Shown here piece after piece: positions 619-32,841 of a stretch of 37,141 bases of DNA. The position numbers and the translations under genes are program-made. The stretch's first letter is position 1. The number at the start of each line of letters is the position of its first letter. The stretch is from Octopus bimaculoides. Lineage: Eukaryota. The stretch covers positions 12,047,329 through 12,084,469 of the forward strand of contig NC_069001.1 in the NCBI RefSeq assembly GCF_001194135.2, given 5' to 3'. The notes beneath the pieces were generated by a model that searched no databases, was not told the origin of the DNA, and saw only the letters and a program-made list of their open reading frames with translations.

Positions 619-624
<6 letters not shown>

Positions 625-689
625 GAAGAAGTAGAATTACCCAAGACATATAAATAGATGTGGTCTAGCCGTGGTAGAGGAGTTGAGTA
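619..689 (+). mobile_element. 5' part of an LTR of the same family as 4949-5115
   Basis: Starts TGTTGTG, then aagaagtagaattacccaagacatataaatagatgtggtctagccgtggtagaggagttgagta, aligning to the LTR at 4949-5115 (minus) with a deletion near the start. The 3' LTR end is not clearly identifiable. Confidence 0.7.
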
Positions 690-1265
690 AAATTTATAAA
701 GTACCTCAATTCATTAAAGTGCTAAGCTTTAAACTACTGTAAATACACTCTTTTAAAGACCAACATCCACAATTTTCTCTAAATAGGATTTTATACGGTG
801 AAATATCAAGCTCGGTGCCCGCTAAACCATGGCATACAAGCTCATTTTGCCAGCAGCAGCCTTTATGAGCGAGGTCGTTGAGTCTAATGTTATATTGAAA
901 ATAGACACGCCTATTGACTATTTTGGTTTCATTGTGTTATGTATCTTCGTGACTTGGAAATTAATGTTCCACCCACTTTATATTTCTTTATATTTCTCTT
1001 TTCGATTGTAATTGTAGATTAATCAACATGTCAGACTTGTCAGCATATTTGGGAAACCTGATGAGTTGAGAGTGGCATAAAGTATCATATAAGCTTATGT
1101 ATATTGTGCCCTCTGATTACCTGACTGCATTTTTTTACGTCATAACAAAGATTCTCAATGAATCGGTCGTAACAGTTCTAGATAACCCACTCATCTCTTG
1201 ATATATACGTGTGTATGTTTTCTGTATGCGTGTGTGTTAGTGAGTGTGTGTGTATGTATGTATAT

Positions 1266-4339: not shown

Positions 4340-4380
4340 GTGCGTATATAGAAACATTCACACATACATACGTCCGTACA

Positions 4381-4382
<2 letters not shown>

Positions 4383-4411
<29 letters not shown>

Positions 4412-4460
4412 CATACATACATACATAGATATATACATACATACATACATACATACATAC
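4383..4460. repeat. (CATA)n microsatellite, left part, interrupted by the 4461-5115 insertion
   Basis: CATA run ends catac at 4460 and resumes catac at 5116. Confidence 0.95.
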
Positions 4461-4573
4461 TGTTTTGTCGATGCCCACAGGCGAAGAGGTAGGCTCTCCC
4501 AAGACATATAAATTGAGGTTGTCTGGCCGTAATAGGAGGTTGAGTAGCAATCGTGTAGCGGTTGAGTAGAGAT

Positions 4574-4919
4574 CCTCCGAAAGTTTATTATTTGCTGGCA
4601 TTCTTCAGCCACTTTCTGCAAAGTGAGTTTCACATCTTGGTTCAACTTTGATAATACTCTTTTCCTAATTTCCGCGTCTTCCGTTGCCTCTAGTCCATAA
4701 ACGAATATTAGACACTTGAACATATCTGGCGTTAATTCTTCCAACTTGAACCTTTCGCAAGCCTTCTTACTGCAGGCGAGAAATAGTACAGAATCATCTT
4801 CAGCAACTAGTTCTCGCCTGCAGTAACAATTCTGTTAACTTCAGTAGTTGCTGCTGTTACTCCTGTTGTTTCACTTGCTGCAATTGTGGTTTCACAACTG
4901 CTTTCAGTAACTCTTCCAT
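4574..4919 (-). pseudogene. gag remnant of Mag/K02A2.6-type polyprotein (two pieces joined across a deletion)
   Basis: ATG at 4919 gives MEELLKAVVKPQLQQVKQQE*QQQLLKLTELLLQ. 4768-4574 gives KKACERFKLEELTPDMFKCLIFVYGLEATEDAEIRKRVLSKLNQDVKLTLQKVAEECQQIINFRR, matching the FKCLIFV.GL....DAEIR.R.L.KL motif of K02A2.6-like Gag. Confidence 0.8.
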
Positions 4920-4929
4920 TTTTGGTGCT

Positions 4930-4947
4930 ATCGCATCCTCGTTGCCA
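4930..4947 (-). promoter_or_regulatory. Primer binding site complementary to tRNA-Ser(GCU) 3' end
   Basis: Minus strand TGGCAACGAGGATGCGAT versus TGGCGACGAGGATGGGAT, the complement of the metazoan tRNA-Ser(GCU) 3' end ...AUCCCAUCCUCGUCGCCA (recalled): 16/18 match. Confidence 0.8.
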
Positions 4948-4948
4948 C

Positions 4949-5115
4949 TGTTATGTCTCAACGCTTGTGCTGTCTAGCACCTTCGGATGATCTCTACTCA
5001 ACCGCTACACAACTGCTACTCGACTGCTACTCAACACTTCTACCACGGCCAGACTACCTCTATTTATATGTCTTGAGAGATCCTACTTCTTCGCCTGAGG
5101 GGCGTCGACACAACA
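4949..5115 (-). mobile_element. 167-bp LTR
   Basis: Begins TGTTGTGTC and ends GACATAACA (8/9 terminal inverted match, TG...CA). Contains a TATA-like catataaata and is followed after 1 nt by a PBS. Confidence 0.85.
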
Positions 5116-5136
5116 CATACATACATACATACATAC

Positions 5137-5320
5137 ATGATGATGATGGCCGTCCACTTGTGACCGAGGAAGACCATTGCCGACCTTCAGGAACGTTATG
5201 CGCTCTAGGACTAACTTATATATTTTGCATTTACGGCTCCGTTGGTGGCTAATGAGTCCTGCTCTTGACAAGCATACACGACTGCAGACATTGCAGATTA
5301 AGCTTTCCCCATTCACTATA
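5137..5320 (-). mobile_element. 3' end of an RTE-clade LINE
   Basis: Minus frame CNVCSRVCLSRAGLISHQRS is a C2H2-like C-terminal motif typical of RTE ORF ends. A short 3' UTR ends ggacggcc(atc)n, an RTE-style tandem tail. Confidence 0.75.
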
Positions 5321-15254: not shown

Positions 15255-15363
15255 NNNNNNNNNNNNNNNNNNNNNNNNNNNNNNNNNNNNNNNNNNNNNN
15301 NNNNNNNNNNNNNNNNNNNNNNNNNNNNNNNNNNNNNNNNNNNNNNNNNNNNNNNNNNNNNNN
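15255..15363. other. Assembly gap (109 N)
   Basis: N run flanked by TA repeats. Confidence 0.99.
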
Positions 15364-18670: not shown

Positions 18671-19390
18671 NNNNNNNNNNNNNNNNNNNNNNNNNNNNNN
18701 NNNNNNNNNNNNNNNNNNNNNNNNNNNNNNNNNNNNNNNNNNNNNNNNNNNNNNNNNNNNNNNNNNNNNNNNNNNNNNNNNNNNNNNNNNNNNNNNNNNN
18801 NNNNNNNNNNNNNNNNNNNNNNNNNNNNNNNNNNNNNNNNNNNNNNNNNNNNNNNNNNNNNNNNNNNNNNNNNNNNNNNNNNNNNNNNNNNNNNNNNNNN
18901 NNNNNNNNNNNNNNNNNNNNNNNNNNNNNNNNNNNNNNNNNNNNNNNNNNNNNNNNNNNNNNNNNNNNNNNNNNNNNNNNNNNNNNNNNNNNNNNNNNNN
19001 NNNNNNNNNNNNNNNNNNNNNNNNNNNNNNNNNNNNNNNNNNNNNNNNNNNNNNNNNNNNNNNNNNNNNNNNNNNNNNNNNNNNNNNNNNNNNNNNNNNN
19101 NNNNNNNNNNNNNNNNNNNNNNNNNNNNNNNNNNNNNNNNNNNNNNNNNNNNNNNNNNNNNNNNNNNNNNNNNNNNNNNNNNNNNNNNNNNNNNNNNNNN
19201 NNNNNNNNNNNNNNNNNNNNNNNNNNNNNNNNNNNNNNNNNNNNNNNNNNNNNNNNNNNNNNNNNNNNNNNNNNNNNNNNNNNNNNNNNNNNNNNNNNNN
19301 NNNNNNNNNNNNNNNNNNNNNNNNNNNNNNNNNNNNNNNNNNNNNNNNNNNNNNNNNNNNNNNNNNNNNNNNNNNNNNNNNNNNNNNNNN
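18671..19390. other. Assembly gap (720 N)
   Basis: N run. Confidence 0.99.
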
Positions 19391-25599: not shown

Positions 25600-25823
25600 N
25601 NNNNNNNNNNNNNNNNNNNNNNNNNNNNNNNNNNNNNNNNNNNNNNNNNNNNNNNNNNNNNNNNNNNNNNNNNNNNNNNNNNNNNNNNNNNNNNNNNNNN
25701 NNNNNNNNNNNNNNNNNNNNNNNNNNNNNNNNNNNNNNNNNNNNNNNNNNNNNNNNNNNNNNNNNNNNNNNNNNNNNNNNNNNNNNNNNNNNNNNNNNNN
25801 NNNNNNNNNNNNNNNNNNNNNNN
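25600..25823. other. Assembly gap (224 N)
   Basis: N run. Confidence 0.99.
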
Positions 25824-28365: not shown

Positions 28366-28788
28366 NNNNNNNNNNNNNNNNNNNNNNNNNNNNNNNNNNN
28401 NNNNNNNNNNNNNNNNNNNNNNNNNNNNNNNNNNNNNNNNNNNNNNNNNNNNNNNNNNNNNNNNNNNNNNNNNNNNNNNNNNNNNNNNNNNNNNNNNNNN
28501 NNNNNNNNNNNNNNNNNNNNNNNNNNNNNNNNNNNNNNNNNNNNNNNNNNNNNNNNNNNNNNNNNNNNNNNNNNNNNNNNNNNNNNNNNNNNNNNNNNNN
28601 NNNNNNNNNNNNNNNNNNNNNNNNNNNNNNNNNNNNNNNNNNNNNNNNNNNNNNNNNNNNNNNNNNNNNNNNNNNNNNNNNNNNNNNNNNNNNNNNNNNN
28701 NNNNNNNNNNNNNNNNNNNNNNNNNNNNNNNNNNNNNNNNNNNNNNNNNNNNNNNNNNNNNNNNNNNNNNNNNNNNNNNNNNNNNNNN
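28366..28788. other. Assembly gap (423 N)
   Basis: N run. Confidence 0.99.
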
Positions 28789-31590: not shown

Positions 31591-32841
31591 ATATATATGT
31601 ATATATATATATATGTATGTATGTATGTATATATATATGTATGTATATATATATGTATGTATATATATATATATGTATGTATATATATATGTATGTATAT
31701 ATATATGTATATATATATATGTATGTATATATATATGTATGTATATATATATGTATGTATATATATATGTATGTATATATATATGTATGTATATATATAT
31801 GTATGNNNNNNNNNNNNNNNNNNNNNNNNNNNNNNNNNNNNNNNNNNNNNNNNNNNNNNNNNNNNNNNNNNNNNNNNNNNNNNNNNNNNNNNNNNNNNNN
31901 NNNNNNNNNNNNNNNNNNNNNNNNNNNNNNNNNNNNNNNNNNNNNNNNNNNNNNNNNNNNNNNNNNNNNNNNNNNNNNNNNNNNNNNNNNNNNNNNNNNN
32001 NNNNNNNNNNNNNNNNNNNNNNNNNNNNNNNNNNNNNNNNNNNNNNNNNNNNNNNNNNNNNNNNNNNNNNNNNNNNNNNNNNNNNNNNNNNNNNNNNNNN
32101 NNNNNNNNNNNNNNNNNNNNNNNNNNNNNNNNNNNNNNNNNNNNNNNNNNNNNNNNNNNNNNNNNNNNNNNNNNNNNNNNNNNNNNNNNNNNNNNNNNNN
32201 NNNNNNNNNNNNNNNNNNNNNNNNNNNNNNNNNNNNNNNNNNNNNNNNNNNNNNNNNNNNNNNNNNNNNNNNNNNNNNNNNNNNNNNNNNNNNNNNNNNN
32301 NNNNNNNNNNNNNNNNNNNNNNNNNNNNNNNNNNNNNNNNNNNNNNNNNNNNNNNNNNNNNNNNNNNNNNNNNNNNNNNNNNNNNNNNNNNNNNNNNNNN
32401 NNNNNNNNNNNNNNNNNNNNNNNNNNNNNNNNNNNNNNNNNNNNNNNNNNNNNNNNNNNNNNNNNNNNNNNNNNNNNNNNNNNNNNNNNNNNNNNNNNNN
32501 NNNNNNNNNNNNNNNNNNNNNNNNNNNNNNNNNNNNNNNNNNNNNNNNNNNNNNNNNNNNNNNNNNNNNNNNNNNNNNNNNNNNNNNNNNNNNNNNNNNN
32601 NNNNNNNNNNNNNTATGTATGTATGTATATATATATGTATGTATGTATATATATATGTATGTATGTATATATATATGTATGTATGTATATATATATGTAT
32701 GTATGTATATATATATGTATGTATGTATGTATATGTATGTATGTATATATATATGTATGTATGTATGTATATATATGTATGTATGTATGTATATATATAT
32801 GTATGTATGTATATATATATGTATGTATGTATATATATATG

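What the first reader, a model, noticed from the sequence alone, without database searches (positions are those of the whole stretch)
4461..5115. Mini LTR-retroelement with INVERTED LTR ends and an apparent integrase-type TSD
Seen: the minus strand carries a complete 167-bp LTR (TGTTGTGTC...GACATAACA), a tRNA-Ser(GCU)-type PBS and two gag pieces. Instead of pol and a direct 3' LTR, it runs into an inverted copy of the first ~125 bp of the same LTR (4461-4583; about 88-89% identical by hand, plus an 11-bp indel). Both ends of the 655-bp unit therefore present a U3-type TGTT...AACA terminus. The gag-to-inverted-LTR junction overlaps by ~10 nt (cctccgaaag at 4574-4583 reads both as gag codons F-R-R and as LTR gatcatccgaag). 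The flanking (CATA)n ends catac and restarts catac, a +1 phase shift expected from a 5-bp duplication. Known: retroviral-type integrases recognise short terminal att sites, and Ty3/Gypsy elements commonly make 4-5 bp TSDs. Inference: an aberrant reverse-transcription product formed by microhomology template switch onto LTR DNA, which was still integrated. If multicopy, it would be a TRIM-like non-autonomous element that looks like a MITE but is retro-derived. Its transcript would also form ~120 bp of dsRNA, a possible ADAR or siRNA substrate. Alternative: two opposite-strand insertions in one microsatellite followed by a deletion.
Basis: partly seen in the sequence, partly recalled or inferred. 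Interest (0 to 1): 0.8.

Follow-up and report, generated by a model that had tools for sequence, protein, structure and literature searches.

The report
Dead retrotransposon copy with inverted ends
This is a 655-bp dead, rearranged leftover of a Ty3/Gypsy-type retrotransposon whose far end is an inverted partial copy of its own LTR; the structure is real but is most likely a one-off copying accident, not a new kind of mobile element.

Summary
Window 4949-5115 (-) is a 167-bp LTR with TG..CA ends. One base later comes a primer-binding site that matches the complement of the tRNA-Ser(GCU) 3' end at 16 of 18 positions, followed by a gag start. Window 4461-4584 (+) is an inverted copy of LTR positions 1-137 (88.7% identity, 13 gap positions). 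The gag piece is real: 627 homologues, and the long ones carry gag-protease-RT-RNaseH-integrase, so this is Ty3/Gypsy-type and not DIRS. The closest relative is an Octopus sinensis locus (80% aa, 90% nt).

The gag/inverted-LTR junction sits on a 7-nt microhomology (p about 3e-4 by chance).

My best reading (about 0.4) is a copy-back type defective cDNA, made by template switches during reverse transcription and integrated through two U3-type ends, which match the normal U5 end at 8 of 9 terminal bases. Two rivals remain open: two opposite insertions followed by a deletion, and post-integration replicative rearrangement.

The TSD evidence is weak (1 in 4 by phase). Copy number could not be tested. 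The unit has no direct R repeat and no PPT, so a propagating TRIM/MITE-like family is unlikely.

The parts
4354..4460 (.). Left flank: (ACAT/CATA)n microsatellite. Its last 5 bases (4456-4460, CATAC) are the left copy of the putative target-site duplication.
   Evidence: TRF row 4354-4460, period 4, 26.5 copies; sequence.
4461..4584 (+). Left arm: inverted partial copy of the LTR, equal to right-LTR positions 1-137 and starting TGTTTTGTC. It includes a TATA-like box at 4507-4514 that points into the unit.
   Evidence: Inverted-repeat pairs I1/I2; alignments: 110/124 identical, 13 gap positions; BLAST E = 1e-30.
4578..4584 (.). 7-nt overlap at the junction between the gag remnant and the inverted LTR arm. 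It reads ACTTTCG on the minus strand. Both parental sequences, as seen in the L001 gag and in the right LTR, read ACCTTCG.
   Evidence: Alignment of the unit to L001 gag and to the right LTR. A microhomology of 7 nt or more occurs at 2.8e-4 of random gag/antisense-LTR junctions.
4578..4919 (-). gag remnant, given as one part. It holds the N-terminal ~35 codons, a short piece of the same N-terminal region in inverted orientation, and an ~80-codon mid-gag piece. Breaks counted: 1 in-frame stop; 1 internal deletion (~0.34 kb relative to the O. sinensis relative, covering the DUF7083 domain region); 1 short inverted duplication with a resulting frame change; 1 3' truncation. pol (PR, RT, RNase H, IN) is entirely absent.
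   Evidence: phmmer: 627 hits at E <= 1e-3; Pfam architecture of long relatives; tblastn of P0164, P0119 and P0019 against the window; BLAST and alignments to L001; inner inverted repeat pair I6.
4930..4947 (-). Primer-binding site TGGCAACGAGGATGCGAT, one base (G, 4948) after the LTR end.
   Evidence: 16/18 identical to the primer complementary to the tRNA-Ser(GCT) 3' end printed in PMC9072684. The same LTR end + G + TGGCGACGAGG is present in L001 and in the unrelated Ty3/Gypsy contigs L004, L008 and L009.
4949..5115 (-). Complete 167-bp 5' LTR (TGTTGTGTC...GACATAACA). It has a TATA-like box at 5061-5068 and an 11-mer tandem array at 4994-5035.
   Evidence: Sequence; homology of its 3' end and PBS with the L001 LTR; TRF.
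5116..5137 (.). Right flank: continuation of (CATA)n. Its first 5 bases (5116-5120, CATAC) are the right copy of the putative target-site duplication.
   Evidence: Sequence. The left flank is a direct continuation of the right flank, not an inverted copy of it.

Best explanation
The unit is a dead, born-defective copy of a Ty3/Gypsy-type LTR retrotransposon (tRNA-Ser primer-binding site, DUF7083-type gag) with a copy-back architecture.

Read on the element's sense (minus) strand it consists of:
- a 5' LTR, the PBS and the gag N-terminus;
- a short piece of that N-terminus in inverted orientation;
- a mid-gag piece;
- an inverted copy of LTR positions 137 down to 1.

The four segments alternate in strand, and every junction has a short microhomology (7 nt at the outer one).

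Proposed mechanism (inferred). During reverse transcription a growing DNA strand switched template three times between strands of opposite polarity. The last switch paired the 7-nt ACCTTCG shared by gag and the LTR. Synthesis then ran to the 5' end of a plus-polarity LTR strand, which is U3 position 1, the natural 5' end of plus-strand strong-stop DNA. That gave a short linear DNA with a U3 terminus at both ends.

The LTR's own terminal inverted repeat makes the U3 end (TGTTGTGTC) and the U5 end (read inward, TGTTATGTC) identical at 8 of 9 bases. The family's integrase could therefore treat both ends as legitimate and insert the molecule into a (CATA)n array with a 5-bp duplication.

The product has no direct R repeat, no PPT and no pol, so it could not replicate again. 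It has since decayed: the arms differ by 11%, which is roughly 15-20 My on the scale used for O. vulgaris repeats in PMC13282606.
For: Shown:
- The inverted LTR arm is real.
- The gag remnant is homologous to the gag of elements with PR-RT-RNaseH-integrase.
- The closest relative, L001 from O. sinensis, has the colinear LTR-PBS-gag order.
- The PBS matches the tRNA-Ser(GCT) complement at 16/18, and the LTR end + PBS is conserved across distant relatives.
- The outer junction has a 7-nt microhomology that is present in both parents, with p = 2.8e-4 by chance.
- A second strand-switch with an inverted duplication and a deletion lies inside gag. Two junctions of the same unusual kind therefore occur within 655 bp.
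- The inverted arm stops exactly at LTR base 1, and the flank beyond it is a direct, not inverted, continuation of the other flank. This argues against a simple fold-back copy of chromosomal DNA.
- The flank phase fits a 5-bp duplication. A sister-family element with direct LTRs has a probable 5-bp TSD at 4/5.
- The two arms are each other's closest relatives among the four LTR sequences available.

Precedent: abnormal template switching in reverse transcription yielding complex elements that are then inserted (PMC1950507; bioRxiv 10.1101/452573).
Against: - There is only one locus. No second copy, empty site or read-level support could be examined.
- The TSD is a phase argument with a 1-in-4 chance expectation. 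If the integrase prefers one phase of the repeat, two independent insertions would show the same pattern.
- With two outgroup LTRs, the left arm carries more private changes (6-7) than the right (2-3). This is not significant, but it points towards arms of different origin.
- Integration of a DNA with two U3 ends has not been shown for this family.
- The same junctions can be produced by DNA-level processes after integration.
Confidence: 0.4

Rival explanations
1. Two independent insertions plus deletion. [quoted passage not shown] A later deletion between two 7-nt direct repeats removed everything between the left element's LTR and the right element's gag. On the plus strand, CGAAGGT occurs in the left element's LTR and again in the right element's antisense gag. 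The small inverted duplication and deletion inside gag is then a separate, later event.
For: - In this geometry the 7-nt repeat is direct on one strand, so a plain microhomology-mediated deletion gives exactly the observed junction.
- Both arms end at a genuine LTR terminus, as independent insertions would.
- The left arm shows more private substitutions than the right.
- A third LTR fragment of the family lies next to a (TA)n array in the same window. The L001 LTR is also preceded by a TG/TA-rich stretch. This hints at a liking for microsatellites that would make double hits less rare.
Against: - It needs at least four independent events: two insertions, a deletion of several kb up to about 10 kb, and the inner rearrangement.
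- It also needs a 1-in-4 coincidence of flank phase, unless the integrase prefers one phase.
- The two arms are closer to each other than to any other available LTR.
- It does not explain why two strand-switch junctions lie in one small unit.
Confidence: 0.25
2. Post-integration replicative rearrangement. One normal element inserted with a normal 5-bp TSD. It was later remodelled in the chromosome by a replication-based repair event of the MMBIR / fork-stalling template-switch type, with several switches between the two strands of the element. One of these switches used the 9-nt terminal inverted repeat TGTTRTGTC at the element's left edge.
For: - Multiple strand switches with short microhomologies and inverted duplications are the hallmark of such events (established knowledge).
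- The terminal 9 nt of the two LTR ends are nearly identical in inverted sense. A switch there would leave the flank and the original TSD untouched.
- It explains both the TSD phase and the similarity of the arms.
Against: - It needs four switches, one of them exactly within the terminal 9 nt.
- Such events usually leave duplicated chromosomal flank or larger templated stretches, and none is seen.
- Reverse transcriptase switches templates far more often than chromosomal polymerases (established knowledge).
Confidence: 0.2
3. Assembly or library artefact. The inverted arm or one of the junctions is a chimeric join in a gapped draft assembly.
For: - The window comes from an assembly with five N gaps.
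- It is very rich in microsatellites and repeats.
Against: - The arms differ at 11% of positions plus indels, so they are not one collapsed sequence.
- The junction microhomologies (7 nt or less) are far shorter than assembler k-mers.
- The nearest gap is more than 10 kb away.
Confidence: 0.07
4. Member of a propagating multicopy family of miniature elements with LTR-derived inverted ends (TRIM-like or MITE-like), or a DIRS-like element whose inverted terminal repeats are native.
For: - The terminal inverted repeats are about 124-137 bp with a possible 5-bp TSD.
- DIRS elements do have inverted terminal repeats (PMC3950715, listed).
Against: - Relatives of the gag carry a DDE integrase (rve, Integrase_H2C2), not a tyrosine recombinase.
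- Canonical relatives have the LTR-PBS-gag order (L001). A sister-family element has direct LTRs (L003).
- The unit lacks a direct R repeat and a PPT, which LTR-type replication needs.
- The interior is a scrambled gag, not a conserved non-coding core.
- No other copy was found in anything searchable. The source genome itself could not be searched.
Confidence: 0.06

Closest known systems
[quoted passage not shown]
   Same: An aberrant cDNA is made by template switching inside the particle and is then inserted as one piece with a target-site duplication.
   Different: Those products carry three direct LTRs and two internal regions. Here the switch is onto a strand of opposite polarity, so the second LTR is partial and inverted, and the product is a 655-bp miniature.
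Copy-back (snap-back) defective genomes of RNA viruses, and L1 twin-priming inversions (own knowledge, not checked with the tools)
   Same: A polymerase leaves its template and copies a strand of opposite polarity. This gives a shortened product with inverted complementary termini, or an inverted 5' part, and microhomology at the junction. This is what the unit 'works like'.
   Different: The enzymes and life cycles differ: RNA replicase, or target-primed reverse transcription. Here the element is an LTR type with an integrase.
TRIM (terminal-repeat retrotransposons in miniature)
   Same: Small size, LTR-derived termini, a PBS, and no functional coding capacity.
   Different: TRIMs have two direct LTRs and a PPT and are multicopy. 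This unit has an inverted partial LTR and no PPT, and its copy number is unknown.
DIRS-like retrotransposons
   Same: A retroelement with inverted terminal repeats next to gag.
   Different: DIRS elements use a tyrosine recombinase and an internal complementary region. The relatives of this gag carry a DDE integrase, and the one sister-family element (L003) whose two LTRs could be compared has them in direct orientation.
MITEs
   Same: Short, with long terminal inverted repeats, a possible short TSD, and a strong hairpin potential.
   Different: The inverted repeats are LTR sequence and the interior is gag. No DNA transposase relationship is seen.
Short template-switch mutations / MMBIR-type complex rearrangements (own knowledge)
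   Same: Inverted duplications with microhomology at the junctions and several switches in one event.
   Different: Those are chromosomal DNA replication or repair events. This is the mechanism of rival 2 and is not excluded.

Membership tests
Ty3/Gypsy-type LTR retrotransposon | gag homologous to the gag of elements with protease-RT-RNaseH-integrase order | tested here: met
   627 phmmer hits. Long hits carry DUF7083, aspartic protease, RVT_1, RT_RNaseH, Integrase_H2C2 and rve in that order. The closest is P0164 at 80% aa.
Ty3/Gypsy-type LTR retrotransposon | LTR with TG..CA ends followed by a tRNA primer-binding site | tested here: met
   The LTR runs TGTTGTGTC...GACATAACA, followed by G and then a PBS matching the tRNA-Ser(GCT) complement at 16/18. 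The same end + PBS is seen in L001, L004, L008 and L009.
Ty3/Gypsy-type LTR retrotransposon | Second LTR in direct orientation, preceded by a PPT | tested here: not met
   The only other copy in the unit is inverted and partial. No direct copy exists in the window except an unrelated 72-bp fragment at 619-690. A sister-family element in L003 does have direct LTRs.
Ty3/Gypsy-type LTR retrotransposon | pol genes (PR, RT, RNase H, IN) | tested here: not met
   tblastn of the full-length relative P0119 against the window hits only the gag piece.
Ty3/Gypsy-type LTR retrotransposon | 4-6 bp target-site duplication | tested here: inconclusive
   CATAC is present on both sides, but inside (CATA)n the phase fits by chance 1 time in 4.
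Mag lineage of Ty3/Gypsy | Phylogenetic placement of RT/IN within the Mag clade | not tested
   The unit has no pol, and no named Mag reference sequence was available from the tools.
TRIM | Two direct terminal repeats flanking a PBS and a PPT | tested here: not met
   The terminal repeats are inverted. A PBS is present. No direct 3' LTR exists that a PPT could precede.
TRIM | Multicopy family with conserved structure | not testable with these tools
   The source genome is not searchable here. Indirect searches found nothing.
MITE | Terminal inverted repeats related to those of a DNA transposon, plus that superfamily's TSD | tested here: not met
   The inverted repeats are LTR sequence and the interior is gag.
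DIRS-like retrotransposon | Tyrosine recombinase instead of a DDE integrase in autonomous relatives | tested here: not met
   Relatives carry rve and Integrase_H2C2.
DIRS-like retrotransposon | Internal complementary region matching the outer ends of the terminal repeats | not tested
   No specific search was made. The only internal inverted repeat found is gag-derived.

The most novel reading that the evidence does not exclude
The unit is one member of a multicopy family of retro-derived miniature elements with LTR-derived inverted ends. In that case DNAs with two U3 ends are made recurrently and inserted by the Ty3/Gypsy integrase in octopus genomes. This would be a hybrid between a TRIM and a MITE that also seeds hairpin-RNA loci.
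Probability: 0.06. Interest if true: 0.7.

Novelty: new variant of a known kind. Interest (0 to 1): 0.3.

Why it matters
If the reverse-transcription origin is right, this locus is a natural record of two things usually seen only in vitro or in engineered vectors. One is strand-polarity switching by a retrotransposon reverse transcriptase. The other is an integrase accepting two copies of the same LTR end.

The structure also places two TATA-bearing U3 regions facing each other across 0.4 kb, and it gives read-through transcripts a very stable hairpin. It could therefore feed small-RNA or RNA-editing pathways. As a single decayed copy it has no evident function, and its value is as a mechanistic curiosity.

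Tried and rejected
- DIRS-like origin: rejected, because relatives carry a DDE integrase.
- Simple chromosomal fold-back copy of the right LTR: rejected, because the inversion stops exactly at LTR base 1 and the left flank is a direct continuation of the right flank.
- Autointegration: rejected by inference, because the inner end of the arm is at an internal LTR position (137), not at an LTR terminus.
- Pfam on the gag pieces: no hit.
- Word-indexed protein search with the gag piece alone: nothing.
- Word-indexed protein search with the open antisense reading of the LTR: nothing.
- Exact look-up of ten window ORFs: none is in the collection, so the source contig could not be traced.
- LTR-core pattern scans of metagenome and prokaryote genome collections: 0 hits.
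- The LTR-end + PBS 21-mer: it found only distant Ty3/Gypsy elements and two chance matches, with no family member among them. The viral collection gave 0.
- ARAGORN: no tRNA gene in the window or in loci L001-L003 to use as a PBS comparator. The comparator was taken from a paper instead.
- Rfam: no family anywhere in the window.
- Relative-rate test of the two arms: too few sites to decide.
- L001, L002, L004, L008 and L009 gave no usable LTR pair. Only L003 did.

Full report
**What is there**

The 655-bp stretch 4461-5115 lies inside a (CATA)n microsatellite (TRF 4354-4460; the array continues at 5116-5137).

Read on the minus strand, it starts with a 167-bp LTR (5115 down to 4949) that begins TGTTGTGTC and ends GACATAACA. 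One base later comes TGGCAACGAGGATGCGAT (4947-4930). This matches 16 of 18 bases of a primer that a published paper gives as complementary to the 3' end of human tRNA-Ser(GCT) (PMC9072684). An ATG follows at 4919.

The other end of the unit, 4461-4584 on the plus strand, is an inverted copy of LTR positions 1-137:
- 110 of 124 aligned bases are identical (88.7%).
- There are 13 gap positions, 11 of them in an 11-mer tandem array.
- JC distance is 0.12.
- BLAST gives E = 1e-30 for this inverted match within the window.

**Is the interior really gag, and of what element?**

Pfam does not recognise the pieces. A full HMMER scan of 1.8 billion representative proteins with the 81-residue mid piece gives 627 hits at E <= 1e-3 and 153 at E <= 1e-10. 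The long hits have DUF7083, then the region matched here, then aspartic protease, RVT_1, RT_RNaseH, Integrase_H2C2 and rve. That is the Ty3/Gypsy gene order with a DDE integrase, which rules out a DIRS-type element whose inverted terminal repeats would be native.

The closest protein is an annotated Octopus sinensis product (P0164, 80% identity). Its locus L001 is 90% identical in DNA over the mid-gag piece. It has the colinear order LTR (121 bp, TGTTATG...GACATAACA), G, PBS TGGCGACGAGG, gag, protease.

The 21-mer spanning LTR end + G + PBS also occurs in three metagenomic contigs that encode distant Ty3/Gypsy polyproteins (L004, L008, L009). In each, gag starts just after it. L008 shows a purine tract followed by an LTR start TGTTAC. 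A sister-family element in L003 has two direct LTRs with TGTTG...AACA ends and a probable 5-bp target duplication, GACAC/GACAA.

Taken together, these relatives point to a canonical form with direct LTRs (seen in L003), a tRNA-Ser-type PBS and a DDE integrase. The window's unit is an aberrant derivative of that form.

**Anatomy in detail**

Using L001 as a guide, the unit consists of four segments that alternate in strand. On the element's sense strand these are:
1. the LTR, the PBS and about 35 N-terminal gag codons;
2. a piece of about 40 nt of that same N-terminal region in inverted orientation, which forms a 24-nt, 92% complementary inverted repeat with the preceding sequence (pair I6);
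3. about 190 nt of mid-gag;
4. LTR positions 137 down to 1 in inverted orientation.

Counting breaks: gag has one in-frame stop, one internal deletion (about 0.34 kb relative to L001, covering the DUF7083 region), one short inverted duplication with a frame change, and a 3' truncation. pol is absent from the unit and from the whole window.

**Junctions**

The junction between mid-gag and the inverted LTR overlaps by 7 nt (4578-4584). Both parental sequences read ACCTTCG there, as judged from the L001 gag and from the right LTR. Among all possible junctions between the L001 gag-protease sequence and the antisense LTR, only 2.8e-4 have 7 nt or more of microhomology. The join was therefore made by annealing, not by blunt ligation. 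The two inner junctions have about 3-6 nt and 0-4 nt of possible overlap.

**Ends and flanks**

The inverted arm stops exactly at LTR base 1. Beyond it the flank is (CATA)n in the same orientation as on the other side, not its reverse complement. The arm is therefore not part of a larger chromosomal fold-back.

The left flank ends CATAC and the right flank begins CATAC. In a tetranucleotide repeat this only says that the duplication length is 1 modulo 4. Any unrelated pair of ends would satisfy that 1 time in 4.

The terminal 9 bases of the LTR's U3 end (TGTTGTGTC) and of its U5 end read inward (TGTTATGTC) differ at one position. A DNA with two U3 ends would present an integrase with nearly the normal pair of ends. 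That such a DNA was actually integrated is an inference.

**How it most likely arose**

Three models fit.

*Model 1 (about 0.4): aberrant reverse transcription, then integration.* A growing strand switched three times between templates of opposite polarity. After the last switch it ran to the 5' end of a plus-polarity LTR strand. That end is U3 base 1, the natural 5' end of plus-strand strong-stop DNA, which explains why the arm ends exactly there. The resulting short linear DNA was then integrated. This needs one event. It explains why two junctions of the same rare kind sit in one small unit, why the termini are flush, why the flank phase fits, and why the arms are each other's closest relatives among the four LTR sequences available. 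Abnormal template switching that yields complex elements inserted as one piece has been proposed before (PMC1950507; 10.1101/452573).

*Model 2 (about 0.25): two tail-to-tail insertions into the same array, then a deletion.* In that geometry the 7-nt repeat is direct on one strand, so a simple microhomology deletion produces exactly this junction. The left arm has somewhat more private substitutions than the right (6-7 against 2-3 with two outgroups, not significant). Against this model, at least four events and a phase coincidence are required.

*Model 3 (about 0.2): one normal insertion later remodelled by a replication-based repair event.* This needs several strand switches, one of them within the 9-nt terminal inverted repeat.

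An assembly artefact is unlikely (under 0.1). The arms differ at 11% of sites, the microhomologies are far shorter than assembler k-mers, and the nearest gap is 10 kb away.

The unit has no direct R repeat, no PPT and no pol. By the established mechanism of LTR-element replication it could not be copied again, so a propagating TRIM-like family is mechanistically unlikely. I could not test copy number, because the source genome is not searchable with these tools and every indirect route returned nothing.

A read-through RNA of the whole unit would fold into a very stable hairpin (-305 kcal/mol, z = -21). A transcript started downstream of the LTR's own TATA-like box (5061-5068) would keep only some 45-55 nt of complementarity to the far arm (inference). 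The left arm carries its own TATA-like box (4507-4514) pointing inward, so convergent transcription is conceivable (inference).

If the arms were identical at birth, their JC distance of 0.12 puts the event at roughly 15-20 My on the scale used for O. vulgaris repeats in PMC13282606.

**Verdict**

The retro-derived, microhomology-mediated origin is supported. The specific chain of aberrant cDNA, two-U3-end integration and TSD is the leading hypothesis but is unproven from a single locus. The multicopy TRIM/MITE-like reading is unsupported.

This is an unusual variant of a known kind of object, a defective LTR retrotransposon copy. It is of moderate to low general interest unless genome-wide searches show more copies.

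Noticed in passing
window 619-690 (+): A third fragment of the same LTR family, about 72 bp. It starts TGTTGTG directly after a (TA)n array, lacks about 17 nt near its start, and ends inside the 11-mer repeat region. It is closer to the right LTR (86%) than to the left arm (78%).
   Followed up: partly
window 5083-5316 (-), with tail to 5116: On the minus strand, an ORF with a weak C2H2 zinc-finger match (Pfam zf-met, E = 5e-4) is followed by (ATC)n and then the (TGTA)n array that holds the unit. This may be the 3' end and simple-repeat tail of a non-LTR element, which would make that tail the insertion target.
   Followed up: partly
L001 9826-9925: The O. sinensis relative carries a local duplication of its LTR end + PBS region (two copies of GTGGCGACGAGG about 60 nt apart). 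It lacks RT/IN and has no second LTR copy within 10 kb on either side, so it is also a truncated copy.
   Followed up: partly
L001 9716-9720 and window 5116-5120 (read on the minus strand): In both loci the 5 bases just upstream of the 5' LTR are GTATG. This is either chance in TG/TA-rich DNA or a hint of a target preference. The L003 sister element has a different flank (GACAC).
   Followed up: no
L003 8700-8760 and 14130-14172: Two (TA)n arrays about 5.4 kb apart lie outside the sister-family Ty3/Gypsy element: one about 0.4 kb upstream of its 5' LTR, the other about 0.6 kb beyond its 3' LTR. This is another loose association of this clade with AT-rich microsatellites.
   Followed up: no
L005 and L007 (metagenome contigs): The 21-mer LTR-end/PBS pattern also matched two GC-rich, apparently prokaryotic coding sequences. 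These are chance matches, with no retroelement features nearby.
   Followed up: partly
window, whole: The window has 32% G+C, five N gaps (15255-15363, 18671-19390, 25600-25823, 28366-28788, 31806-32613) and dense di- to tetranucleotide microsatellites. No tRNA gene and no Rfam family were found.
   Followed up: yes
P0001 (693 aa): One representative homologue contains the gag region twice (two matched stretches). This is another rearranged or duplicated copy in this gag superfamily.
   Followed up: no
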